A DNA stretch of 64,000 bases from Octopus bimaculoides (Eukaryota), in the NCBI RefSeq assembly GCF_001194135.2, contig NC_068981.1, forward strand, positions 70,352,618 through 70,416,617. Reading direction: 5' to 3'. Each line of letters starts with the position of its first letter. The stretch's first letter is position 1. Below the pieces are notes generated by a model, which was not told the DNA's origin, made no database searches, and saw only the letters and a list, made by a program, of their open reading frames with translations. This document shows, piece by piece, positions 12,908 to 28,054 of the stretch. The position numbers were made by a program, and so were the translations under genes.

Positions 12908-15814
12908 CTCTCGTATATATAGTCTAACGTCTCATCACCATCTATTGGTCTAACTGCTTTGCCTATTCTACACCCGCTTATCTCATCAATTCATAATGCC
13001 ATGACAGCTTTAATTTGGAGAAAAGTCCTTCAAGTTTGCATATTGAATATCTCCATTCTCTATAACTCCAACACCTGCTACCCCTTCCTCCTTTTATCTC
13101 CCAAATTATGATGCGTAAGTGGGAAGAGATTGTACTGTGGCAAAATCTACCTACCTTTTCTGATTCTCCTGTGACGTTGTTCTCTTGAACACCTTCTCAT
13201 CAGGATGTACCCTGCACTCTCATAACCATCTTATCTATCTTTTCTCCTCACGTCTCTCGCCGCTCATATTTAACGGTGATGCAACTCTGCAACTCTTTCT
13301 GCCTAACCGCCTCACCTTAGCTTCTCACCATTCTCTCTCACTCACCATTCTCTCTCACTCACTACTCTCACTCACTACTCTCGTTCACTAAACCTCTGGT
13401 TACCTCAACCCAATTTTCCCATCATCTGCGATTTTCTACTGTCATCCTTTGTTTTCTTAACATACCACTATAACCACTCCTCTACATCGCTGCACTGACA
13501 TATCATTCTGTAAGTTACAATCGCATTCATACTACTTTATTTCTGCTTTTCGATACTAATAGTGCCATGGTTCTTTCTTTCTCTCTCTGTCTCCCTCTCT
13601 CTCTTTCTTTCTTTTCCTCTCTCTCTCTCTCACTCACTCCCCCACTCCCTTACTCACCAATACACATGTAGCAACACTAAAAAGAGCATCTTGAACACTT
13701 ACGAACTGTCTGAACCATACTGTCATAGCAGATGATCTCCACCATCGTATCACTGGGTCCACGTGATCAAAATTTTTTGTTCCCTTTCTCCACCACATTA
13801 ATTCCTGGCATTATTCTTCTCTTCCCCTTTCTCTATTTCCATTACTCGCGCTCTACCTTCTTTACTTAGATATTCCACTCAAAATACATCTGTTCATTTC
13901 ATGCAGGCTGTCTAGCGAGCCTCAACGGTACTAGTAGTACTATATTTTGACAGAATACTTAAACACAGAGAAAACCTAAAACATTATTTGCTGCGTTTAG
14001 TTGAGAAGAAGTGACCGACAGCACCTTGAAAATGCTTTGGGTTTGAAGTAAATGCATTTGAAGTATTGAAGATTTAGTTCTTGTTCCTCTGTCACACGCT
14101 CCAACTGTTCCCAGACACATTTGAACGAATACAAGCCAAGTCATTCAACACAATTTCGTTTCACCAAGCCAAGGTATTTCAGCATATAAGCTATTAGCAG
14201 AAATTGAAATCAAATTTTAATGAAAGACATTTTTGTTTTTTTCTTTTTCTTTCTTTTTTTCTTGGCAATGATCTGCAATATTAACTAGCTTATCCATGAA
14301 CTATGTGAGAAACGCGTAACAAATTTCATTGTTGTCTCTGAAAGAACCATAAAGAAAATAAGCAGCAATTATTACTTCTCTGAAAACAACTTTCATAAGG
14401 ATTCGCCGAAACTTACAATTACAAGAGACATATATGTTGGAGAATAATGTGATTCAGTCGAAGGCCAGTAACGAACAGGATATTAATAGGTATGAATTAG
14501 ATGAAATGTGTGGGAGACTAAGGGTAATTTTCAATACTCGTGAGACATGTAAAAATCCACAATGTAGAACGTTGTCCTAAGCGATGGTAAATTTTAGGCA
14601 CCTTTCACAAACATGAGTGCTTGTATTTGCTCTATTCCAAGCATCATCCTGTGATGAACTTGGTATGGAGAAATGAAAACAAGCATCTACAAGTGGACAC
14701 CGTCGAACCAAAGATTCAAATATTTAACAGTTTCTCTGAAAATTGCCCAGCTTTGTACGAATCACACGTGGCCAATAGAAAACTCTTGGAGATGACAAGT
14801 AAGGATTTTGCAAATCAATTACATCGCGTGAAAAGAAGACATTTATTTCAGGAGAATTAAAATTAATATAAAATTTAACATTTAGGATCTTTCATACAGT
14901 GTGTATAGAATGCATATTGACTGTCATATCGATGTTGCTTTAGAGAGTAAATTGAGAAATGCTAGTTTGATGTTAAATATACGCAGTAATAAGTCTGTTT
15001 ACACCTTCAGAGGAAGGAAAAAGAAAAACTCACGTTCCATCTATGAGAAACTAACGGATTTGACTATGGCGGCATTTATTAGATAAAATAGAGGGAGATA
15101 GCCTACTTCCCGTGAAGACAGTCGAGGAAGTAAAGGATGATATATTTGAAAAAAATAAAATAAAATGAGTACAAATAAAACCAACGCAGAGTAACAACTA
15201 TTAGGACACGATAAAAAAAACAAAAACGCAATACAATTAAAGACATAGATACACGGTACAGCTTTTGATAATGTTGCACAAAACTGTATGAAATATTAAA
15301 ATTTCAAACACAAAAGCCGGAAAAATATTCATAAACGCAAATATGAACTGAAAAAGCAGAAATTTAACTTACTGCAACAAATGCCCGAATTGTGAAGAAG
15401 TATATTTGGGTCACACTGGAAATACACTATCAGAACACTCACGTGTTTACCGACGGCAAATTAGAGATCCAGTTGTCCGTTAGATACATTTGAATAACCA
15501 TATAGCAACATGTGGTCGGAAAATGTTTATATTTCCATTCTACAAACTATACGATCTAAGTGAAATTGAGAGAAAAAAAAATTATTAATAAATTCGAACC
15601 CAAGCTAAATAAATAATAATACTAATACTTAGAGGTAGTATTTCTACTGCTACGACCACTACAACTAACAACAACAACAACAACACTAAAGGTGCTCATG
15701 ATGACGATAGCAAGAAAATACTAGCAATGTCAAGCAGTAATTGTTTTCACCTCAATAGACGTCAGTGATTGGTTGAAATTACCGAAATACGACAATTTTT
15801 TTACATGAAATAAA

Positions 15815-16098
15815 TGTGGTGTTATGGGCTGTGATGAGCTGTGTGTTGTTGGTGGAGAAGGATGAGGCAAACAGAAGTGAAGCCAGACCGGAAGGGCCAG
15901 ACCGGAAGGGTCAGACTGGAAGTCGGGCCACACGCGGTCGAAGGCTAGCACGTGCGTCAGTTAGAAAACAGAGAGGTTACGAGAAAGACGTGTTTTGATC
16001 AGGAGCGATTGTGTACTCCACTGCGGTCGACAAGGTAAGGTCCAACGTTTCATTCTGTCCTTTTGCTTCTTGTTGTCTTTTTCCTCCATCACACCACA
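15815..16098 (+). repeat. 5' LTR (284 bp)
   Basis: TGTGGTGT...ACACCACA; 3 substitutions versus 19577-19860. Confidence 0.97.
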
Positions 16099-16110
16099 AG
16101 CTATTTCGGC
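16099..16110 (+). promoter_or_regulatory. Primer-binding site AGCTATTTCGGC, complementary to tRNA-Phe(GAA) nt 1-12
   Basis: It immediately follows the LTR CA. Its reverse complement GCCGAAATAGCT is the 5' end of animal cytosolic tRNA-Phe as I recall it (GCCGAAAUAGCUCAG...). Confidence 0.8.
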
Positions 16111-16139
16111 CCATAAGAAAAAAACAATTNNNNNNNNNN

Positions 16140-16774
16140 ATGAAGCTGGTCGCGAAGCTCCAAGGGATAGGCGACTTGGCAAGCTTTCTACCACTGTACT
16201 TGGATGGTCCGGCGTTGGCGCTATTTTTAGAGAGGGAAGAGAGGGACTGAGTTAGCGCGGAGAAAATAGAAATCCGCTTGATGGAGGCCTTCGCAGAAGG
16301 AATGTTTGAGGCGTACGCTCGCCTGGGGAGAGCGAAGTGGACTGGCGAACAGGTCGACGAGGGAGAATCGCTGGATCGAACAGTAAAGTTGGCGTTTGTG
16401 ACTGGTTTTCTTGACCACATGTCGGTCGAATTGCAGAAACTGCCGGAGGTGAACGCCATGCCCATGGCAGATATAATAACGAGGGCTCGCATGTTAGTTT
16501 AGTGTTGTAGATCGACTCCGTTGGCAGCAACAGCAACAGCAAAAGGTGGCCGACCAAGGAGTATCGGAGAGCGTCGAACAAGGAACGTGTGCGACCGTTC
16601 AAAGGACAGTGTTTCCGGAGTCAGGGCCCGCACATGGTGCGAGACTGCAAGTTACCCAAGCCTGAGGTCATTTGCTACCGTTGTCGAGAAACGGGACATA
16701 TAGCCAGCGAATGTCTGCAGGGAAACGGTCTAAGGGAGACTACTACGCCAGTGGTCATCCCTTCGGATCAATAA
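16140..16774 (+). pseudogene. gag: gag with two zinc knuckles; disrupted
   Basis: KLVAKLQ..LASFLPLYLDG..LMEAFAEG..KWTGEQVD..KLAFVTGF. Knuckles are CFRSQGPHMVRDC (degenerate) and CYRCRETGHIASEC. In-frame stops lie at 16248-50 and 16500-02, with a frame change near 16560-16590. The start is hidden by the gap at 16130-16139. Confidence 0.85.
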
Positions 16775-16779
16775 AGGCG
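16720..16779 (+). promoter_or_regulatory. -1 programmed ribosomal frameshift signal (G GGA AAC plus predicted pseudoknot)
   Basis: The heptamer is in X XXY YYZ register with gag codons (CAG GGA AAC), and pol is in the -1 frame. A 12-bp stem starts 5 nt downstream. Confidence 0.75.
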
Positions 16780-19496
16780 CATTTTGTTCTACCCGTTGTT
16801 GATGTGCTGGTGAATGGGAAGATGTCGCGTGCCCTCGTTGACATAGGCTGTACAACGACCCTGATGACTCCGGGAGTGGTAGAGACGTGGAGTGGAGAAA
16901 GCAGTGTGAGGGCAGTCGACAGAAGAGAGGTACGCTGTGAAGGCATTACTGACGTGCAGATTAAGGTGCAGGGAGCAAAGCTGACGCTGCAAGCAATTGT
17001 AGTTGGCCACTTGGTGGATGAGATTGACGTGGTGATGGGAATGGATGCAATCACCCGTTTAGGAGGTGTCACTGTCAACGAGGCCGGTGTGACTTTCGGG
17101 GTCGCGGGGAAACCGTGTATGGCGACGCCGTGCATTGGTGAGAACCGCGAAGAAATCTATGCCGCGCACACCATTGAAGACCAGGATTTTCGTGCCGCCT
17201 TCGATGGCCAGAGGTGGACAGTGGAGTGGCACTGGAGGGGNNNNNNNNNNNNNNNNNNNNNNNNNNNNNNNNNNNNNNNNNNNNNNNNNNNNNNNNNNNN
17301 NNNNNNNNNNNNNNNNNNNNNNNNNNNNNNNNNNNNNNNNNNNNNNNNNNNNNNNNNNNNNNNNNNNNNNNNNNNNNNNNNNNNNNNNNNNNNNNNNNNN
17401 NNNNNNNNNNNNNNNNNNNNNNNNNNNNNNNNNNNNNNNNNNNNNNNNNNNNNNNNNNNNNNNNNNNNNNNNNNNNNNNNNNNNNNNNNNNNNNNNNNNN
17501 NNNNNNNNNNNNNNNNNNNNNNNNNNNNNNNNATACCTGCAGGTGCATGTGGCTGAGAGACTGTGGAAGCATCAGCTTGTCAGGTATAAGGGCCGGACAT
17601 ACTGTTTGACCAGGCTGGGGTTTGGGCTAAATTCAGCGCCAAAAATTATGGCAACAATTCTCAAGGCCATCCTGGGAAAGGTGGACAGAGTAAAGAGGGC
17701 CACCAATTCGTACATCGATGACATCCTTGTGGACGAAACCATAATGCCAGCAACGGAGGTCATAGGCCACCTGAAGAAGTTCGGACTCGTCGCCAAGCCA
17801 CCAGAGGCCATGGAGGGAGGCGCTGCACTGGGCCTCAAGTTACGGAGAAACAAGGCCGGTGCGTTGGTGTTTCGGCGTGGGAACGAGATCCCTGAACTGG
17901 GCACCAGTGTGAGTAGACGGGAACTGTTCTCGGTGTGCGGGAAGCTGGTGGGACACTACCCGGTTTCAGGATGGCTCCGGACAGCATGTAGCTTCATCAA
18001 GAGACGAACCGAAGGAGCAAAGTGGAATGACAGAGTTGGGGAGAAAACGATCGACATGATGCAGGAAGTCTTGGTCAGAGTGAGAGCAGAGGATCCAGTG
18101 AGGGGCAGTTGGTATGTTCCCAAATTAAAGAGTGGGATCGTTTGGTGTGACGCCAGTAGCATCGCTATAGGGGTTGTCTTGGAAATGGGAGGCACCGTGG
18201 TGGAAGACGCAGCCTGGCTCAGGAAGATGGATGACTGCAACCATATCAATGTGGCGGAGTTGGATGCCGTGCTGAAGGAGGTGAACCTGGCCTTGAAGTG
18301 GGGGCTGTGCACCATCGAAATTAGAACCGATTCGGCCACTGCGCTTGGTTGGGTGACGGCAGTCATCACCAATGAGCGGAGGGTGCGAACCAAAGGGGCT
18401 GCGGAGATGCTGGTAAAGCGCCGATTGGGAATATTGCGGGAGCTAACCGCTGAGTTCGATCTNNNNNNNNNNNNNNNNNNNNNNNNNNNNNNNNNNNNNN
18501 NNNNNNNNNNNNNNNNNNNNNNNNNNNNNNNNNNNNNNNNNNNNNNNNNNNNNNNNNNNNNNNNNNNNNNNNNNNNNNNNNNNNNNNNNNNNNNNNNNNN
18601 NNNNNNNNNNNNNNNNNNNNNNNNNNNNNNNNNNNNNNNNNNNNNNNNNNNNNNNNNNNNNNNNNNNNNNNNNNNNNNNNNNNNNNNNNNNNNNNNNNNN
18701 NNNNNNNNNNNNNNNNNNNNNNNNNNNNNNNNNNNNNNNNNNNNNNNNNNNNNNNNNNNNNNNNNNNNNNNNNNNNNNNNNNNNNNNNNNNNNNNNNNNN
18801 NNNNNNNNNNNNNNNNNNNNNNNNNNNNNNNNNNNNNNNNNNNNNNNNNNNNNNNNNNNNNNNNNNNNNNNNNNNNNNNNNNNNNNNNNNNNNNNNNNNN
18901 NNNNNNNNNNNNNNNNNNNNNNNNNNNNNNNNNNNNNNNNNNNNNNNNNNNNNNNNNNNNNNNNNNNNNNNNNNNNNNNNNNNNNNNNNNNNCGTACCAT
19001 CAAGACTATGGCAGAGAGGGGCCACATTTCGCCAATCGAGGCCGTTTTTTGGTATAATATGTCACCCCGGTCAGGACAGGCTGAGGAGTCGGTGCCACAC
19101 AGGGCAATATTCAGGTACGAGTGGAGGCACCCGTGTATTGCATCAATGCAACTCCGGCGAGAAGAGCACACCCTCGTGCAGATCGGGGAAGAAGTATGGG
19201 TAAAATCCCCAAATGCACGGTGCACATCACAATGGAGGAAAGGAACTATAACCTCCATCAATTCAAAGAACAACGTCTCGGTCGATGGTATGCCACGCCG
19301 TGTTTTGAATGTGCGGAAGATTGTCGGTGCTTCAGAGGATGGAACCAGCTGCAGTGGGCAGGATGATGAAGACAGCAGCAGTAGGCAAGATGATGAAGGC
19401 AGCGCGCCAGGAACTCAGGCCAGTCCCGGGGTTGCACAGCGACCACAGAGGGAGCGGCACCCTCCTCCCTGGTTGGCTGATTATGAAACCAATTAA
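16720..19496 (+). pseudogene. pol: pol: aspartic protease, RT, RNase H, integrase (two assembly gaps)
   Basis: Protease ALVDIGCTTTL (DTG changed to DIG). RT YCLTRLGFGLNSAP...SYIDDI. RNase H WCDAS...HINVAEL...TDSAT. Integrase tail RTIKTMA..YNMSP, SH3/GPY-F-like IGEEVWVK..WRKG, and terminal RPQRERHPPPWLADY. Gaps at 17241-17532 and 18463-18992 prevent judging frame continuity. Confidence 0.92.
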
Positions 19497-19567
19497 GGTA
19501 GTTCGGGAGCGAGGACTGAGTGGGAGAGAGGACTGAGTGGGAGAGCCGGTTGAATGATCTATAGATC

Positions 19568-19576
19568 AGGGGGGCG
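19568..19576 (+). promoter_or_regulatory. Polypurine tract AGGGGGGCG
   Basis: G-rich run directly upstream of the 3' LTR TG. Confidence 0.75.
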
Positions 19577-19860
19577 TGTGGTGTTATGGGCTGTGATGAG
19601 CTGTGTGTTTTTGGTGGAGAGGGATGAGGCAAACAGAAGTGAAGCCAGACCGGAAGGGCCAGACCGGAAGGGTCAGACTGGAAGTCGGGCCACACGTGGT
19701 CGAAGGCTAGCACGTGCGTCAGTTAGAAAACAGAGAGGTTACGAGAAAGACGTGTTTTGATCAGGAGCGATTGTGTACTCCACTGCGGTCGACAAGGTAA
19801 GGTCCAACGTTTCATTCTGTCCTTTTGCTTCTTGTTGTCTTTTTCCTCCATCACACCACA
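19577..19860 (+). repeat. 3' LTR (284 bp)
   Basis: Direct repeat of 15815-16098, 281/284 identical. Confidence 0.97.
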
Positions 19861-20572
19861 ATAACTTCGAATACAAAATTTTTTATATGTTCTATAACAT
19901 AAAATATACAAGTATACGAAGCTTGAAAGTGTTTCGGTACCAAAAACACTACATAAAACATAAATGAAAAGTGGTGCCCGTCAATTCAGAAGGACCCGAA
20001 AAGTTAGTAAAAACAATCTTAATTTGGGGGTTTAAAGTTATATTACCACAGCTACTCATACCACCACCACCACCGCTAACAACAATAACAATAATAAAGG
20101 AGGTGATAATTGTGATGATGACAATTGAAATATAAAAATTCCTGGGAAATGTTGTTTACAACATTTCTAAAAATAACCCAACAATTGCTACTTTGGCCAG
20201 GGTCAAAATACAGGTCTCTTGAAATGTTCAACGAACCGTGACGCCCAAACCAAACACCAGTCAACCTAAGTAATTCTGATTGGTCAGACTACAGTTTGCA
20301 AAAATTAACATTGTGGAGCCAATACCTATACAAATGTATTTAAGGCACACAGTTTAGCTATCTCACTACAGTTGTAAATTGTAAAACAAAACTGTCACCA
20401 CTACTACATGAACCCGAAGATTTCATAGTTTAATTCATGAAAGTAATAGTTTAATATCGGAATGGATATTTGATATTCTATCAATTCATTTTATTATCTT
20501 ATATTATATTATTATAAGACTAAATAAAACGTGACAATCAAAGTTGGAATTTCTTTGAATAATATATATATA

Positions 20573-20612
<40 letters not shown>

Positions 20613-22943
20613 CGCACGTATATAGCGATGTATAAGGTGTTTTTATGAGTGTGAATGTTTGATATGATCCAACAGTATATATACAACGTGTATACACGCA
20701 AGCGGGTATGTATGTCTTTAATATTATTGTTTTTCATCTGTCCTTTATAATGTTTATTGCATGTTCATTTCATTCATACTTTTTATTTTACTGTTATTTT
20801 TATTATTTATCATCCTTGTCATCACGGCAAGTAGGCTAACTCATTAAGTAACCCCGTCTATTTTATCAAGTAAATGGTGCCACCGGCTAATCCTTTAGCT
20901 TCCTACGACTGGTATGTGATTCTTCCTCCATTCTCTAAAGGAGTGGACAGATTTATTACCATGTATATTTAACATCAAAATAGCATTCTCCAATTCATTC
21001 TCTGAACTGGTACCGAGATGAGAGAGTCAATGTGTATTCTATACGCTTTGTGTGAAATATCCTAACCGTTAAATTTTATTTTAATTTAAATTCACCTGAA
21101 GAAAGTTTTTTTTTAACATGATGTAAAAGCGCGGTAATAGAGGATGATAAATAATAAAAATAACGGTAAAATAAAAAGTATGAATGAAATTAACATACAA
21201 TAATTATCAATAAAAGACACGTCTGAAGCAGCTGTTGTGGCTTCAGCCCATTTGTGCTATATTACATCACAAAGGAACCGTTGTATTGTCAACCTGTAGT
21301 GTGCCGCGGACTGCATCCGAAGTATACGCTTGGGAGATCATACGTATACGTTAAGTGTATTTGGTCTGTGCTTGCAAATGTATGCTTAACCGGAAGGACA
21401 AGTCCGTATATATTTTTGTAAGTACGTGGGTGTCCGTAAACACTGTTGGTATGCGGGTATGCTGTCCTCGACTCTACTTTAGTATCTTTGTGATTTGTTA
21501 TTAACATTCATCGATTCTATTGGATTCTGCATATAATTATATGAATGCGTGTGTGTGTGTATGTTTTTTTGCATATGTATATGTTTGTTTGAGTGTATGT
21601 GTGTGTGCGCCCCGCACAAAGGACAAATCCTCCCAAAATTTATCATTTATTGTGGATAAAAGTAAATATTTTCTACTATTCATTGGACAATTCTGAAACT
21701 GTATCTGCAAAATGAAATCATTCTTTCAGTAGACAATAATCGATGTTGATCATCAGAAACATTTATTGGCACTACACTGATACATTATATTCAATGAACT
21801 TTAAAAAGGCATGGGTAAATTTGATGTTAATTGCAAATTATATACATTAGAGTTATGTTGATTACCATTGATAATAAATATATGTATTTATTTTATTAAT
21901 GCGGGAAAATGTTTCAAGTAAACATTTATAAATTGCATCAATAACAAATGACAAAATGAATAAACTATTTACTTTAAAAATAAATGGAGAAAAAACATCT
22001 TGTAACTAATGAGCGACATGTGCCTCTTTTGGAAATACCTCATTTATGCTCATAATAAGAAAATATTTTTCTCTGAAATATCTTATAGCCACTGGGATTT
22101 CTGTACTTCATCATTTTCTTCCTATGAGTGAACCAGTAGAGCACCAGTGACGTGCTATAATCTTATTTCGTATAGATTTATTAGTCTCAAAGCTGGGTTG
22201 TTTATGCTTTTTACAGTATCCGTGTGCTTTGTCGTATTGGCCTTTCTACCAAAGAACGCATACATTTATAATATTGTGACCATCTGAGGTAAACATGATA
22301 CTTTAAATTTTTCAATACAATATTTTAAGAAATTCACTGTTAATCTTCAGCCTGATTTTGCATATGATTTTATAGCAATCTACAACATGCAAGAAGTTTC
22401 TAGTTACTTTTTTTTTATCAAATTTCAGCGTGTTATATTTTGAGAACAGAATATGCGCAAGTAGTGTTGCCTGGTTAAAAACTCAGTGATATTATATCTG
22501 TAAAAAATTTTTAAAGCATAATCTTATAATTTATACACATTGTATGTTGTTACTGATTATAAAAGCAAATATATTATGCTTGCGTGCAGGTTCGTTTACA
22601 TATGAAGATGTATGATGTATCATTACTTAACATTTCCATTGTTAAAACGTGAAATTCCATGTCTTAATATAACCTGACTGTATAATTAAACATTGGAACT
22701 CTCATCTCATTTATGCTCTGTATTTTCTGACGCAAAATATTTTAGAGTCGTTGCGTTTGAAATATTGAAATACATAAAATGATATTTCTTCCGAAGAAAC
22801 TTAAATGAATAAATTCTCTCTTATCGTCATTTTTGCAAATTTGGGGTCTGTACCAAAACGATGCTTTCATACAGACACATACACACACGCACACACACAA
22901 ACACGAACATACACACACACACAGACATATACACACATATGTA

Positions 22944-23014
<71 letters not shown>

Positions 23015-26000
23015 GCGAGATTGCTTTACCTTTACATGGCATTATTTAATGTTATATGTTTATCAAAGCAGGAATAGTAACAGTTGATTGTATACTTACC
23101 AAAATTATTTTTGAATTTTGTTTCTAAATCTTATATACGAGTTTTATGTATGATTATCTCTACGTGGTTCCATTACCTATACAAAAAGAGGCTTTATCCA
23201 TTCCCTGTCATTCCAAAATACGAAAATCTGTATGCAATTAGCTACAGGCAAATAATGAAATGCAATAGAATCAAACCAAGCGAAACTGTGCTTAACGAGC
23301 CAGGTATCGTTTGAAAAGCACCTGACAGGACACGCTTGTTTCTTTCAACCAGTTGTTTAGAATCTCACCCGCGAGAGACAGATTGGTTGAAGTGATAGTT
23401 GTGATTAATAAAGTATCTCACGAATTCCATTTTCTCTTCCTCTTATTTGTTATATACAAATACATTTATACACACACAAACACACAAACACACACGCGCA
23501 CGCACGCACACACACAGATATATATATGTGTATGGATATATNNNNNNNNNNNNNNNNNNNNNNNNNNNNNNNNNNNNNNNNNNNNNNNNNNNNNNNNNNN
23601 NNNNNNNNNNNNNNNNNNNNNNNNNNNNNNNNNNNNNNNNNNNNNNNNNNNNNNNNNNNNNNNNNNNNNNNNNNNNNNNNNNNNNNNNNNNNNNNNNNNN
23701 NNNNNNNNNNNNNNNNNNNNNNNNNNNNNNNNNNNNNNNNNNNNNNNNNNNNNNNNNNNNNNNNNNNNNNNNNNNNNNNNNNNNNNNNNNNNNNNNNNNN
23801 NNNNNNNNNNNNNNNNNNNNNNNNNNNNNNNNNNNNNNNNNNNNNNNNNNNNNNNNNNNNNNNNNNNNNNNNNNNNNNNNNNNNNNNNNNNNNNNNNNNN
23901 NNNNNNNNNNNNNNNNNNNNNNNNNNNNNNNNNNNNNNNNNNNNNNATAAAACAAATAATAAATGAGTATGTGCATATATACGTACAGGTCTGTGCATAC
24001 CTACGTCTACCTGTATATATAGGTGCATATCTGGGTACAGGACATTCCATGGCTCTTCCCATGGACCACAAATTAAATTTGTATACACAAATTAAACCTG
24101 TGCCATGGAGGAATGTCGTGGCGGACAAAAAACAAGACAGGAAAACAAACGGAAAAGGCTATGCGGCCAGACCTGAAAAATTATGTGTATATGAACGCTG
24201 TGAGGCACGAACTGAAAAAGACGGGACGAAGTAAGTTCGCGTGTTTGCTTGGCGATAGCCAAGGAAGAAAAGGATTAGTGACGGGAAGCATGTGACCAGG
24301 GAGGGATAAGAGAGAGAGAGAGAGAGAGAGAGTGGTAGAGGGAGAAACTAGGGGAGGAGGTAGAAGAATAGGTGAGCAACGAGAGAAAGAGAGGAAGAGA
24401 GAAATATAGTAGTAACAGAAGGAAGAACGAGAGGGGAAAGATAGATACGTAGTAGTAACAGAGGAATAAGGAGAGGGGGGGAAGTGATAGAGAAAGAGAT
24501 AGAGTCGCGTCAGAAAATATAAAGTTGAAAAAACTACTTACAACAGGGATGACGCAGGCGTTCGATCATGTAAAACAAATAATAAATGAGTATATGCATA
24601 TATACGTACAGGTCTGTGCATACCTACGTCTACCTGTATATATAGGTGCATATCTGGGTACAGGACATTCCAAACAAAACGTAGACAAGAAAATAATAAT
24701 AACCAGAGTACAGAAAACACACAAACCTTCATCAGCTACCCNNNNNNNNNNNNNNNNNNNNNNNNNNNNNNNNNNNNNNNNNNNNNNNNNNNNNNNNNNN
24801 NNNNNNNNNNNNNNNNNNNNNNNNNNNNNNNNNNNNNNNNNNNNNNNNNNNNNNNNNNNNNNNNNNNNNNNNNNNNNNNNNNNNNNNNNNNNNNNNNNNN
24901 NNNNNNNNNNNNNNNNNNNNNNNNNNNNNNNNNNNNNNNNNNNNNNNNNNNNNNNNNNNNNNNNNNNNNNNNNNNNNNNNNNNNNNNNNNNNNNNNNNNN
25001 NNNNNNNNNNNNNNNNNNNNNNNNNNNNNNNNNNNNNNNNNNNNNNNNNNNNNNNNNNNNNNNNNNNNNNNNNNNNNNNNNNNNNNNNNNNNNNNNNNNN
25101 NNNNNNNNNNNNNNNNNNNNNNNNNNNNNNNNNNNNNNNNNNNNNNNNNNNNNNNTATATATACTCATACATACACAAACAAACACATGCATACAAACTA
25201 CGCTTGCATAGGCACACAGGTATCTACCTAACTTTTACCCTCCTCTTCCCTTACATACTATCGTGCGTTCGCATTTAATAAGATTAGTTCGATGATGTTT
25301 TCGTATGATAATTGTCGGACTGATTCCTATCCAAATAAATATGAAGGTGAACAAAGGAAAAAGATATAAAGTATAAAACATAAATTTTACCTGAGGATGT
25401 CGCAGATAAAAATGTATTAAAACGATTTGAATGTCTACTAATACACGCACTACTATTAGAATATTTTATGAATTTTATATGCTTATCCTATATATACATA
25501 TATTAGTATGAGTATATACCTTCAGAATTGTTTTTACGGCTTTTACCTAATATTATATATAACATGCACTAAAATAAAAATGCAAATTAGATTTTTTTGC
25601 AAAAATTTTAATGGATTTTAAATTAGAAGAAATATATACGTATGACATATGATCAATTTTATAGGAAAAAGTGTGTATGCACACACATATACACAACACA
25701 TACACACTCGCTAATATATATATATATATATATATATAAGTATATATATATGTATATATGTATGCATGTATATACATACATATATATTTACATACATAAA
25801 TATAATACTATATACCTGTAGTATATTTATGTGAAGACAAATTATTATACATAGATTTATACACATACATATATGTATGTGTGTGGGGGGGGCGTGTACA
25901 AATGCATGTATGCCTGTATGTATGTCTATATGTGCGTATGCATGCATGTATGTACATATGTAGGTATGTTGGTAGGTAGGTAAGTAGGTAGGTAGCTAGC

Positions 26001-28054
26001 TAGCTAGGTAGATAGGAATGTACTTATGTGTGTATGTACGTACGTACGTATGTATGTGTGTGTGTATGTATGTATGTATGTTTGTATTTATGCATAAAAA
26101 CGCATACTTAAATGGCAATGCATTCTTAGGGATGGAAATATTTCCTGTTAAGGAAAAATGCGAAAGAAATTGCTACGTAGCATTAATAGCCTATTAATCA
26201 TAATTTAATGCTATTTATTTCTACTATTTCCAATGTCTGTTTTAATAATTCTAATATTGTATATAGTAACTATTGATTCAATATAAATAGCGAATATTAT
26301 TTTGTTTGCTTCATTGCCTCTTAAAAGGTATATTTACACACATACAAAAATGAAGATACATAAATATGTTCGCTCATCCTATAAAGCTAGCAAGATGTTA
26401 GATTTGAAGAAAAATATTTATCAGCACACACGACATTGATTTATATGAATTAGCATTTAACGTATCGATTTTCCCTTCTACCTGATACTGTAGAGATATA
26501 TTTCATATCAGAAAGCGACGTAGACGAACAAAAGCCAACTTAATAGTATAATTCATCATACTTGTTCAACAAACACAAAGTAACAACACCTTATGAAAAG
26601 AAAACGACTGTAGAATCATTATATCTTATCCTTCTCAAAATACGAGGCGTATATGGACAGAGAAGTTTAAGCTGGATAATGAAACCCATAGAGAAAACGA
26701 ATTTTAAAGATATTTTGCCAATAAACTGGGAATATAAATCTCAACCCAGCAAAGGTCTATTCGATTTCAGATCTTGAGATATGTGCTGTAACTGCGACTG
26801 AAAAATGTACTGTAACTCTTCAACTGATGTAAGTTTTCAAAGTCATATTGAGCGGTTTGAGTATCGCTGAATACATATATTGATGTAGTTATTCAAAACA
26901 CACGCACTTAATACATTCTTGTTTCACTTCCTTATTCTTCAACAATATTAAATGTGTTTATTATGGTATCAGGTGTTGGTGCAGCACAGCTAAATGAACG
27001 GGAATGTGAGAATATTAGTGATTTTGGCATGATATTATTACTACCGCTGTCTGAGACAGTTCTCCGTCAGTATTTTACATTGACTATATATTTTACAGCG
27101 AAAAATATCTACTGATAAAGTTATCACCTTAAATTGTTTCAAAATTTTAATATAGAGAAACCTAAATGACCAAATTTGTAAAAGATTTATATCATAATTG
27201 AATATAATATCTAATTACAAATTGAACTTAAGATCTAAAGAAATGTTTTTTTGTTAAATGTTTTATAAAATCATTTAGAGTAAATATTCTATATGTGCCA
27301 TCTACATAGTTACAAATATTGAAAGTGGAGCGTAAATTTCAAGATCAAGAGGTAGTCGTAAGTATTTTGGAACATCCTTCATTACAATTTCTAACCTTGC
27401 AATAGCAATTAATATAATAGATGAAGGGGGTGTACGAATTTGGGTAATGATTGCAGTTAGAACACTTGATGATTAAAATCGGTACCACATGGGGGCTTTT
27501 TGTGTATTTGGCACCGGTGAAAGAAGAAAGGACCATATGGAACTTTCAATGTCACATGTCTGTGAAAACAAACTATGTGAAAATTGGTTTGATAAAAGTA
27601 TGTCACTTTATATATTTTTGTCTTGTTATTGCGAAATGCTTTTGCCTATTACCTAAGATTTTCTCTCAATTTAAGGATAACTATATCATAATTTGTAATT
27701 CCACGTGTTGTATGACGAAATGTTAGTACCAAGAATGAATTAGGTACTTCATCTAACAAAATGCAAGTGAATGTGAGAAAATAGATTTTAACGAGGGTTC
27801 CATTCATTTTCTAGGTTTATATTGCTTGTTTGCTTATGTTGCTTGTTTGCTTATGTTGCTTGTTTGTTTATTTACCATGAGAGAAACTCTATGATAAATA
27901 CCACAGTAAAGTCTTTTCTAGCAGAACCTCCACTTTCAAGAGGGAAGAAATATTACCGGTCGGTATTAATACTGCTTCTGTCGCTAATATATCGTTTTAA
28001 ACAAGTTAACTGGCTAATCGCAATACTATTGCCTGTTCTGGTACTAATTTTCTA

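What the first reader, a model, noticed from the sequence alone, without database searches (positions are those of the whole stretch)
16099..16110. LTR retrotransposon apparently primed by the first 12 nucleotides of tRNA-Phe (5' tRNA fragment), not a CCA 3' end
Seen: the 5' LTR ends ...ACACCACA at 16098 and is followed with zero spacer by AGCTATTTCGGC; there is no TGG. Established: LTR elements normally use a tRNA 3' CCA end. Known exceptions are the tRNAi-Met 5' half (copia, Ty5) and self-priming (Tf1/sushi). Recalled: animal tRNA-Phe(GAA) begins GCCGAAAUAGCUCAG, so the site is a 12/12 complement of tRNA nt 1-12. The match stops exactly at tRNA G1 on one side and exactly at the LTR edge on the other. 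That is what plus-strand run-off copying of a 12-nt primer would regenerate. Inference: the primer is a 12-nt 5' fragment cut between U12 and C13 in the D-stem, by a host nuclease or an element-encoded activity. I know of no description of this priming mode, but could not search the literature.
Basis: partly seen in the sequence, partly recalled or inferred. Interest (0 to 1): 0.92.

Follow-up and report, generated by a model that had tools for sequence, protein, structure and literature searches.

The report
Retrotransposon primed by a tRNA's 5' end
An octopus LTR retrotransposon, and nearly every relative I could find in molluscs, crustaceans, bryozoans and aquatic metagenomes, carries directly after its left repeat a 12-base site complementary to the first 12 bases of a tRNA (usually tRNA-Phe), which points to a way of starting reverse transcription that I could not find described.

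Summary
The window holds a defective 4.05-kb LTR retrotransposon (15815-19860). It has 284-nt TG..CA LTRs, a 5-bp target duplication and a G-rich polypurine tract (PPT). The base after the 5' LTR starts AGCTATTTCGGC, a 12/12 complement of nucleotides 1-12 of human and Drosophila tRNA-Phe(GAA). There is no TGG/CCA-type site.

The feature belongs to the whole family. Anchoring on gag alone, 67 related loci carry a 12-mer of the form AGCTAnnnnGGC at the same place, and one degenerate locus does not. These loci come from octopuses, sea slugs, a bryozoan, three crustaceans and about 60 metagenome contigs with only 36-54% Pol identity.

Conservation starts at the LTR edge and stops after 12 nt. Only tRNA positions 4-7 vary, among about ten discrete versions. 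One version is an exact complement of tRNA-Lys(UUU) 1-12. The versions recur in unrelated element clades and seem to follow the host (all three crustaceans share one), as expected if the site is recopied from a host tRNA primer.

Tf1-type self-priming is excluded, because no complement of the site lies in the LTR.

Most likely mechanism: tRNA nucleotides 1-12 anneal, the tRNA is cut after U12, and the 12-mer primes minus-strand DNA. The nuclease is unknown. No description was found in the searchable literature.

The parts
15810..15814 (+). 5' copy of the target-site duplication (ATAAA)
   Evidence: The 3' copy is ATAAC, a 4/5 match. Relatives have perfect 5-bp duplications.
15815..16098 (+). 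5' LTR, 284 nt, TGTGGTGT...ACACCACA
   Evidence: 3 mismatches against the 3' LTR.
16099..16110 (+). Primer-binding site AGCTATTTCGGC, complementary to tRNA-Phe(GAA) nt 1-12, with no spacer after the LTR
   Evidence: The same site is conserved at the same position in 67 related loci.
16140..16762 (+). gag, broken. Frame 3 runs 16140-16577 with in-frame stops near 16248 and 16500. The CCHC zinc knuckle is in frame 2 at 16664-16762. The start codon is hidden by the N gap at 16130-16139.
16786..17235 (+). Aspartic protease domain (frame 1), running into the N gap at 17241-17532
17534..18457 (+). C-terminal part of reverse transcriptase (YIDD motif), DUF7047 and the RNase H domain (frame 2). The RT N-terminus is lost in the gap.
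18993..19484 (+). C-terminal part of integrase (frame 3). The zinc-binding and core domains are lost in the N gap at 18463-18992.
   Evidence: The intact integrase of the relative L006 is shown.
19555..19568 (+). Stem-loop TGATCT-AT-AGATCA lying directly against the polypurine tract
   Evidence: It is conserved in the family, with compensatory changes in the stem.
19569..19576 (+). Polypurine tract GGGGGGCG, the plus-strand primer site
   Evidence: The same arrangement is seen in relatives.
19577..19860 (+). 3' LTR
19861..19865 (+). 3' copy of the target-site duplication (ATAAC)

Best explanation
The window contains a dead copy of a compact (about 4 kb) LTR retrotransposon. Its gene order is gag(CCHC)-protease-RT-DUF7047-RNase H-integrase. 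Its lineage is widespread in aquatic invertebrates and does not carry the Pfam signatures of Ty3/Gypsy, BEL/Pao or Ty1/Copia.

In this lineage the minus-strand primer-binding site (PBS) is a 12-nt sequence that starts at the base after the LTR's terminal CA. It is complementary to the 5'-terminal 12 nucleotides of a host tRNA: acceptor strand 1-7, U8, A9 and G10-C11-U12 of the D stem. In molluscs and a bryozoan this tRNA is tRNA-Phe(GAA).

Proposed cycle:
1. Shown by sequence only: the tRNA's nt 1-12 pair with the PBS.
2. Inferred: the tRNA is cut between U12 and C13, leaving a 3'-OH on U12 opposite the first PBS base.
3. Inferred: RT extends this 12-mer into U5 to make minus-strand strong-stop DNA.
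4. Inferred: plus-strand strong-stop synthesis copies the 12-nt RNA to its very 5' end (G1). This regenerates exactly 12 nt of PBS and explains why conservation stops there.

The cut is most plausibly made on the RNA:RNA duplex by the element's own RNase H, as in Tf1. That step is the least certain.
For: Anatomy of the window copy.

12/12 complementarity to human and fly tRNA-Phe 5' ends.

Same site, same register, no spacer in related copies:
- Octopus sinensis and O. bimaculoides.
- Aplysia and Plakobranchus.
- The bryozoan Watersipora, about 48% Pol identity with an unrelated LTR.
- About 50 of 80 metagenome loci chosen by Pol similarity alone.
- A scan anchored only on the gag N-terminus finds the motif in 67 loci and misses it in one degenerate locus.

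Information content is high only from -3 (the ACA of the LTR end) to +11, and falls to background at +12.

Only tRNA positions 4-7 vary, giving about ten discrete versions. The version AGCTATCCGGGC is a 12/12 complement of human tRNA-Lys3 nt 1-12.

Versions recur in separate Pol clades. The three crustacean hosts (Oratosquilla, Trinorchestia, Palaemon) share AGCTATCTAGG[CT], although their elements nest among mollusc elements that carry the Phe version.

Two Oratosquilla copies have identical LTR ends and near-identical leaders but differ at 2 of 12 PBS bases, against 2 of 50 flanking bases. This is what recopying from a different tRNA would produce.

No complement of the PBS lies in the 400 nt upstream. 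No 3'-end-type tRNA-Phe site lies in the element. The predicted 12-bp duplexes are stable, -19 to -24 kcal/mol, and the PBS region of the intact Watersipora leader is predicted to be unstructured.
Against: Nothing here shows the primer physically. The tRNA-Phe of the octopus and of the other hosts was not read. The assignment rests on identity between human and fly, and the tRNAs matching the non-canonical versions are unidentified except for Lys(UUU).

A 12-nt RNA primer is short, and no nuclease is known to cut tRNA at 12/13. Known 5' tRNA fragments are longer, by my recollection.

Nucleotides 1-12 are fully base-paired or stacked in folded tRNA, so annealing needs chaperone activity, which is assumed to come from the CCHC Gag.

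The invariance of G1-C3 and U8-U12 was partly imposed by my search patterns. However, the gag-anchored scan found no alternative motif.
Confidence: 0.8

Rival explanations
1. Tf1/sushi-type self-priming. The 12-mer pairs with the 5' end of the element's own transcript, which is then cut and used as primer. The resemblance to a tRNA would be coincidental.
For: The site is about as long as the Tf1 PBS (11 nt, from my own knowledge), directly abuts the LTR and lacks TGG.
Against: In 52 copies the best match to the reverse complement of the PBS within the 400 nt upstream is 7-8 of 12. That equals the shuffled expectation, with one chance-like exception that is not a tRNA. LTRs are unalignable between hosts while the 12-mer is identical. 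Exact identity to tRNA-Phe and tRNA-Lys3 5' ends would have to be coincidence.
Confidence: 0.03
2. The 12-mer is a conserved cis-element with another role, such as packaging, dimerisation, translation start context or binding of intact tRNA as a cofactor. Minus-strand DNA would be primed by something else.
For: gag starts 0-30 nt after the site, so the leader is very short and must hold all its cis functions. In my recollection, accessory tRNA-genome contacts outside the priming site are known for Ty1, Ty3 and HIV.
Against: The LTR boundary is set by where minus-strand synthesis starts, so whatever pairs with the base after the CA is the primer. No other candidate site exists between the LTR and gag. 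A protein- or RNA-binding signal would not be expected to switch among discrete tRNA-like versions in step with the host.
Confidence: 0.07
3. The primer is a pre-existing host small RNA, a 12-nt 5' tRNA fragment made by a cellular nuclease or by exonuclease trimming back to the duplex edge. The element's RNase H would not make the cut. This is a variant of the main model that differs only in who cuts.
For: From my own knowledge, copia uses a pre-cut 39-nt tRNAiMet fragment, and RNase P hyperprocessing was proposed as its source. Nothing in the sequence shows an element-encoded activity. The RT-RNase H fold is generic.
Against: No evidence either way from sequence. By my recollection, fragments of 12 nt are not a described tRNA-fragment class.
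Confidence: 0.3
4. Chance, or a decayed canonical PBS in one dead copy.
For: The window copy is defective: it has stops, frameshifts and assembly gaps.
Against: The same 12-mer lies at the same position in dozens of independent lineages. The within-window expectation is 0.11.
Confidence: 0.01

Closest known systems
copia and 1731 (Ty1/Copia, Drosophila): primed by a 5' fragment of initiator tRNA-Met
   Same: The primer is a fragment from the 5' part of a tRNA rather than the CCA end, so the tRNA must be cut internally before it can prime. (From my own knowledge: Kikuchi et al. 1986.)
   Different: In copia the fragment is about 39 nt, cut in the anticodon loop. The PBS pairs with the 3' end of that fragment (about nt 25-39), not with tRNA nt 1-12. 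The tRNA is initiator Met, not Phe. The gene order (integrase before RT) and the RT lineage also differ.
Tf1/sushi group (Ty3/Gypsy chromoviruses): self-priming
   Same: A short PBS (11 nt versus 12 nt here) directly abuts the LTR and pairs with the extreme 5' end of an RNA. In Tf1 the primer is released by an RNase H cut at the end of an RNA:RNA duplex, which is the mechanism I propose by analogy. (From my own knowledge: Levin 1995, 1996; cited in PMC7472051.)
   Different: In Tf1 the RNA is the element's own transcript. Here no complementary sequence exists in the LTR, and the partner sequence is that of a host tRNA.
Ty5: primed by the anticodon stem-loop of initiator tRNA-Met
   Same: It uses a non-CCA, internal part of a tRNA. 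(From my own knowledge: Ke et al. 1999.)
   Different: A different tRNA and a different region, not the 5' terminus.
Canonical retroviral and LTR-retrotransposon priming by the tRNA 3' end, including IAP/MusD elements that use the 3' end of tRNA-Phe
   Same: A host tRNA is the primer, the PBS lies next to U5, and the PBS can switch between tRNAs (PMC7472051).
   Different: The canonical PBS starts with TGG and pairs with the last 8-18 nt of the tRNA. Here the opposite end of the tRNA is used, and no TGG-type site exists.

Membership tests
LTR retrotransposon (Ortervirales-type retroelement) | Direct long terminal repeats with TG..CA ends and a short target-site duplication | tested here: met
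   284-nt LTRs, 99% identical, TGTGG...CCACA. 5-bp duplications in the window copy and in relatives.
LTR retrotransposon (Ortervirales-type retroelement) | gag with a zinc knuckle, and pol with protease, RT, RNase H and integrase | tested here: met
   Pfam hits on the window copy and on intact relatives. The structure model matches RT-RNase H folds.
LTR retrotransposon (Ortervirales-type retroelement) | A PBS next to the 5' LTR and a polypurine tract next to the 3' LTR | tested here: met
   PBS at 16099-16110 and PPT at 19569-19576. The PBS is of an unusual kind.
Ty3/Gypsy (Metaviridae) | RT and RNase H of the Gypsy type (Pfam RVT_1 strong, RT_RNaseH or RT_RNaseH_2) | tested here: not met
   RVT_1 scores below its gathering threshold, there is no RT_RNaseH hit, and the RNase H matches RVT_3/RNase_H instead. 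The gene order and the Integrase_H2C2 domain are compatible with Gypsy. No reference-based RT tree was made.
BEL/Pao (Belpaoviridae) | Pfam signatures Peptidase_A17, DUF1758/DUF1759 and DUF5641 | tested here: not met
   None of these hit at E <= 0.1 in six full or partial polyproteins.
Ty1/Copia (Pseudoviridae) | Integrase lies upstream of RT | tested here: not met
   The order is PR-RT-RH-IN.
Tf1/sushi self-priming elements | The PBS is complementary to the first about 11 nt of the element's own transcript (the start of R in the LTR) | tested here: not met
   No complement beyond chance in the 400 nt upstream in 52 copies.
copia-type tRNA-half priming | The PBS is complementary to an internal region of initiator tRNA-Met | tested here: not met
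   The PBS matches nt 1-12 of tRNA-Phe or tRNA-Lys-type sequences. The copia PBS sequence is from memory and was not aligned.
Troyka | CG..CG termini and 3-bp target duplications | tested here: not met
   TG..CA termini and 5-bp duplications. The definition is from PMC12440569.
Odin retrotransposons / lokiretroviruses | Dual RNase H (a tether plus an acquired RNase H); hosts are sea anemones or vertebrates | tested here: not met
   There are only about 140 residues between YIDD and the single RNase H, and the model shows a thumb followed by one RNase H. Hosts are molluscs, crustaceans, bryozoans and nematodes. The definition is from PMC9040795.
Elements primed by the 5'-terminal 12 nt of a tRNA (the class proposed here) | The primer RNA attached to minus-strand strong-stop DNA is tRNA nt 1-12 | not testable with these tools
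   This needs particle cDNA or an in vitro priming assay.
Elements primed by the 5'-terminal 12 nt of a tRNA (the class proposed here) | The PBS version equals the 5' end of a tRNA of the same host | tested here: inconclusive
   It matches human and fly tRNA-Phe and human tRNA-Lys3. No host tRNA gene was found in 92 loci or in the window.

The most novel reading that the evidence does not exclude
A large and so far uncharacterised lineage of LTR retroelements is marked by Pfam DUF7047 and holds more than 1,000 protein clusters at 50% identity. It has replaced 3'-CCA priming with a mechanism in which its own RNase H cuts a host tRNA after nucleotide 12 on an RNA:RNA duplex and uses the released 5' 12-mer as primer. 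Mechanistically this would sit between tRNA priming and Tf1-type self-priming. It would also mean these elements escape the host's 3'-tRNA-fragment defence against LTR elements.
Probability: 0.35. Interest if true: 0.92.

Novelty: new variant of a known kind. Interest (0 to 1): 0.86.

Why it matters
The choice of primer is one of the few steps of retroelement replication thought to be almost invariant. A tRNA 3' end is the rule, and only two well-studied kinds of exception are known: tRNAiMet fragments in copia and Ty5, and self-priming in Tf1.

A third mode would have several consequences if confirmed:
- It would add a new mechanism, and probably a new RNA-cleaving activity, to reverse-transcription biology.
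- It would explain why standard LTR annotation tools, which look for complements of tRNA 3' ends, report no PBS for these elements.
- It would give a simple sequence tag (CA + AGCTAnnnnGGC + gag) for finding the family.
- It would predict that these elements are blind to silencing by 3' tRNA fragments.
- It would provide a natural system in which the PBS reports the 5' sequence of the host's tRNA.

The comparative signal is strong enough that each of these points is directly testable.

Tried and rejected
- **Self-priming.** I searched each LTR for the complement of its PBS and found nothing above shuffled background. The single 11/12 hit, in L081, is not a tRNA or a transcript start.
- **A canonical 3'-end tRNA-Phe site.** The only near matches in the window lie outside the element and at chance frequency.
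- **Host tRNA genes.** ARAGORN and Rfam on the window, ARAGORN on 92 loci, and a pattern search for GCSnnnnTAGCTCAR all found no usable tRNA.
- **Identity of the non-canonical 12-mers from the literature.** Only unrelated primers turned up.
- **Superfamily assignment.** A phmmer search of Pol against PDB gave nothing. A profile search gave weak hits to foamy virus and HIV RT. Foldseek gave near-equal scores for caulimovirus, foamy virus, HIV, MLV and Ty3 RTs. The superfamily is therefore left unassigned.
- **Odin, Troyka and BHIKHARI as possible names for the family.** All three were rejected.
- **Literature on this priming mode.** I searched the 12-mer as a string, tRNAPhe plus PBS plus retrotransposon, and DUF7047. 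No description was found.
- **A conserved RNA structure at U5-PBS.** The intact Watersipora leader folds no better than its shuffles.
- **L066.** It first looked like an exception, but it has the site further downstream.

Full report
**1. What is at the coordinates**

The window carries an LTR retroelement at 15815-19860.
- Two 284-nt direct repeats lie at 15815-16098 and 19577-19860. They differ at 3 positions and have TGTGGTGT...ACACCACA ends.
- The flanks are ATAAA and ATAAC.
- A G-rich polypurine tract, GGGGGGCG, lies directly before the 3' LTR.
- The base after the 5' LTR starts AGCTATTTCGGC (16099-16110). No TGG follows.
- Allowing one mismatch, the 12-mer occurs once in 64 kb, against 0.11 expected.
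- The interior encodes a CCHC Gag, an aspartic protease, RT (YIDD) with DUF7047, RNase H and the C-terminal part of an integrase.
- The copy is dead. gag has two in-frame stops and a frameshift. Three runs of N (16130-16139, 17241-17532, 18463-18992) hide the gag start, the RT N-terminus and most of the integrase.
- The nearest proteins are from Octopus sinensis and O. bimaculoides (72-89% identity), so the host is an octopus.

**2. The tRNA match**

The reverse complement, GCCGAAATAGCT, is the 5' end of tRNA-Phe(GAA).
- A human primer reads GCCGAAATAGCTCAGTTGGGAG (PMC10505166).
- A Drosophila 5' probe reads GCTCTCCCAACTGAGCTATTTCGGC (PMC7038984).

Identity between a vertebrate and an insect makes the same sequence likely in a mollusc, but I could not read an octopus tRNA gene. 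The window has none, and neither do the fetched loci.

**3. Other copies and relatives in named genomes**

I fetched loci around homologous Pol proteins. The junction reads as follows.

| Host | Locus | LTR end, then site, then following bases | Note |
|---|---|---|---|
| O. bimaculoides | L003 | ...ACACCACA, AGCTATTTCGGC, CCCACG | exact |
| O. sinensis | L002 | ...CACTACA, AGCTATTTCAGC | one CpG-type change |
| O. sinensis | L001 | LTR end and first PBS bases lost | deletion |
| Aplysia | L007 | ...AAACTGCA, AGCTATTTCGGC, GAGG | exact |
| Plakobranchus | L005 | AGCTATTTCGGC just upstream of gag | exact |
| Watersipora (bryozoan) | L006 | ...AAACCACA, AGCTATTTCGGC, TCTAAAC | about 48% Pol identity, unrelated 146-nt LTR, nearly intact element |

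Perfect 5-bp target duplications in L001, L003, L004 and L006 fix the LTR edge at the CA, so there is never a spacer.

**4. Sampling that did not depend on the site**

A Pol profile search of metagenome contigs returned 80 loci with 36-54% identity to the Watersipora Pol.
- About 50 of them have CA+AGCTAnnnnGG[CT] just upstream of gag.
- Most of the rest lack that region, or carry the site behind a mutated CA.
- A scan anchored only on the gag N-terminus finds the motif in 67 loci. One evaluable locus, the degenerate L080, lacks it.
- Across 55 non-redundant junctions, information content is near maximal from the ACA of the LTR end to position +11. It is at background from +12 onward and upstream of -4.
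- gag starts 0-30 nt after the site.

**5. The variants**

Only the bases opposite tRNA positions 4-7 vary. About ten discrete versions result. Written as the tRNA strand, they are:
- GCCGAAA-UAGCU, the Phe type and the most common
- GCCGCGA-
- GCCGUGA-
- GCCUAGA-
- GCCGAGG-
- GCCGGGA-
- GCCCGGA-
- GCCGUAA-
- GCCUGGU-
- GCCUUGG-

GCCCGGAUAGCU is exactly the 5' end of human tRNA-Lys3 (PMC8715211).

In a neighbour-joining tree of the RT-RNase H core, the versions do not follow the element clades. GCCUAGA occurs in one large metagenome clade and, separately, in the mantis shrimp, amphipod and shrimp elements. These nest among mollusc elements that carry the Phe version.

Two Oratosquilla copies share the LTR end and the leader but differ at 2 of 12 PBS bases, against 2 of 50 flanking bases.

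Discrete, recurrent, host-linked versions are what one expects if the site is periodically recopied from a host tRNA primer. Free drift would not produce this pattern.

**6. Alternatives**

- **Tf1-type self-priming** needs the complement of the PBS at the start of R. In 52 copies the best match in the 400 nt upstream equals the shuffled expectation.
- **A canonical 3'-end site** is absent.
- **Known RNA families:** Rfam finds nothing in the element.
- **Duplex stability and accessibility:** the 12-bp tRNA:PBS duplexes are predicted at -19 to -24 kcal/mol. The PBS region of the intact Watersipora leader is unstructured.

**7. Mechanism**

Shown: a family-wide 12-nt site, in the position that defines the minus-strand primer, complementary to tRNA nt 1-12.

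Inferred:
- The tRNA is opened, presumably by the zinc-knuckle Gag, and nt 1-12 anneal.
- The tRNA is cut between U12 and C13. The LTR's terminal A cannot pair with C13, so the duplex ends there.
- RT extends U12 into U5.
- Later, plus-strand synthesis copies the 12-nt RNA to its 5' end. This regenerates exactly 12 nt and allows occasional replacement by another tRNA's sequence.

By analogy with Tf1, where RNase H cuts an 11-bp RNA duplex (my own knowledge; cited in PMC7472051), the element's RNase H is my first candidate for the cut. A host nuclease or exonuclease trimming is a live alternative. All versions keep U8 and A9. From my own knowledge, G9 is often m1G in cytosolic tRNAs and would block copying, so this may be a constraint. 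That is speculation.

**8. Comparison with known systems**

The closest analogues are copia/1731 (a 39-nt 5' fragment of tRNAiMet), Ty5 (the anticodon stem-loop of tRNAiMet) and Tf1/sushi (self-priming).

The element fails the defining test of each:
- It pairs with a different tRNA region than copia and Ty5.
- It has no self-complementarity, unlike Tf1.
- It is not Copia, because the order is PR-RT-RH-IN.
- It lacks the BEL/Pao and Gypsy Pfam signatures.
- It is not Troyka or Odin.

Sequence and fold searches place its RT-RNase H about equally far from caulimovirus, foamy virus, HIV, MLV and Ty3 enzymes, at 13-17% identity. Its integrase is nearest to retroviral integrases such as MMTV and MVV.

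The lineage is sizeable. 1,160 clusters at 50% identity score E <= 1e-30 against the Pol profile. Named members come from molluscs, crustaceans, bryozoans and Trichuris nematodes, all annotated as hypothetical proteins.

**9. Novelty and limits**

Full-text searches found no description of this priming mode. I searched for the 12-mer itself, for tRNA-Phe together with PBS and retrotransposon, for self-priming and 5'-complementarity phrases, and for DUF7047.

The library holds only open-access papers and bioRxiv, and Repbase and Dfam were not available. Prior description therefore cannot be excluded.

I rate this as a new variant of a known kind of system: tRNA-dependent priming of LTR retroelements. 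Confidence in the sequence-level claim is high. Confidence in the physical primer is good. Confidence in the cutting enzyme is low.

Noticed in passing
window 19555-19576; also L001-L007 and about 20 metagenome loci: A short stem-loop lies directly against the polypurine tract. In the window it is TGATCT-AT-AGATCA, followed by GGGGGGCG and the LTR's TGT. Across the family there are 16 different stems that keep pairing through changes on both sides, for example TGAACT/AGTTCA, TAGTGT/ACACTA, TGGCGCT/AGCGCCA and AGCTTT/AAAGCT. About 3% of random positions show such a hairpin. It may set the 5' boundary of the plus-strand primer.
   Followed up: partly
L004 8419-8430 versus L092 8731-8742 (Oratosquilla oratoria): Two copies of one family have identical LTR ends and near-identical leaders but different 12-mers (AGCTATCTAGGC and AGCTACCAAGGC). 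It looks as if the site was recopied from a different tRNA.
   Followed up: partly
L001 about 8300-8330 (Octopus sinensis): The last roughly 85 nt of the 5' LTR and the first bases of the PBS are deleted, leaving ...GACCGCTG-TTCGGCTCATAAAA. The break joins GCTGATTTCG in the LTR to GCTATTTCGG in the PBS, which suggests a deletion at a short repeat.
   Followed up: no
L011-L090 and the Logan/ENA contigs: Many metagenome and SRA contigs of this family are 3.5-4.6 kb, about one element long. Several are circularly permuted (integrase - PPT - LTR - PBS - gag) or carry the LTR-PBS twice (L014, L015, L032, L038). This could reflect collapsed LTRs, tandem copies or circular DNA forms.
   Followed up: no
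family-wide, e.g. L040, L045, L078, L081: The gag ATG follows the 12-mer after 0-30 nt, and in several elements immediately (..GGC ATG). There is almost no leader for packaging or dimerisation signals. The elements are unusually compact, at 4.0-4.6 kb with LTRs of 135-540 nt.
   Followed up: no
window 19929-19942, minus strand: TGGTACCGAAACAC matches 12 of 14 bases of the complement of the tRNA-Phe 3' end. It lies about 70 nt outside the 3' LTR. Matches of this quality are expected by chance (1.35 per window), so it is probably meaningless.
   Followed up: partly
window 16130-16139, 17241-17532, 18463-18992 and elsewhere (e.g. about 30674): Runs of N show the window comes from a gapped draft scaffold. 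The element's length still matches that of gap-free relatives, so the gap sizes appear to be estimates.
   Followed up: no
window 23948-24049 and 24571-24672: A 102-nt direct repeat pair, 99% identical and 623 nt apart, unrelated to the element. Long TA/TG microsatellites lie at about 8150-8300, 10140-10300, 22900-23060 and 25700-26110.
   Followed up: no
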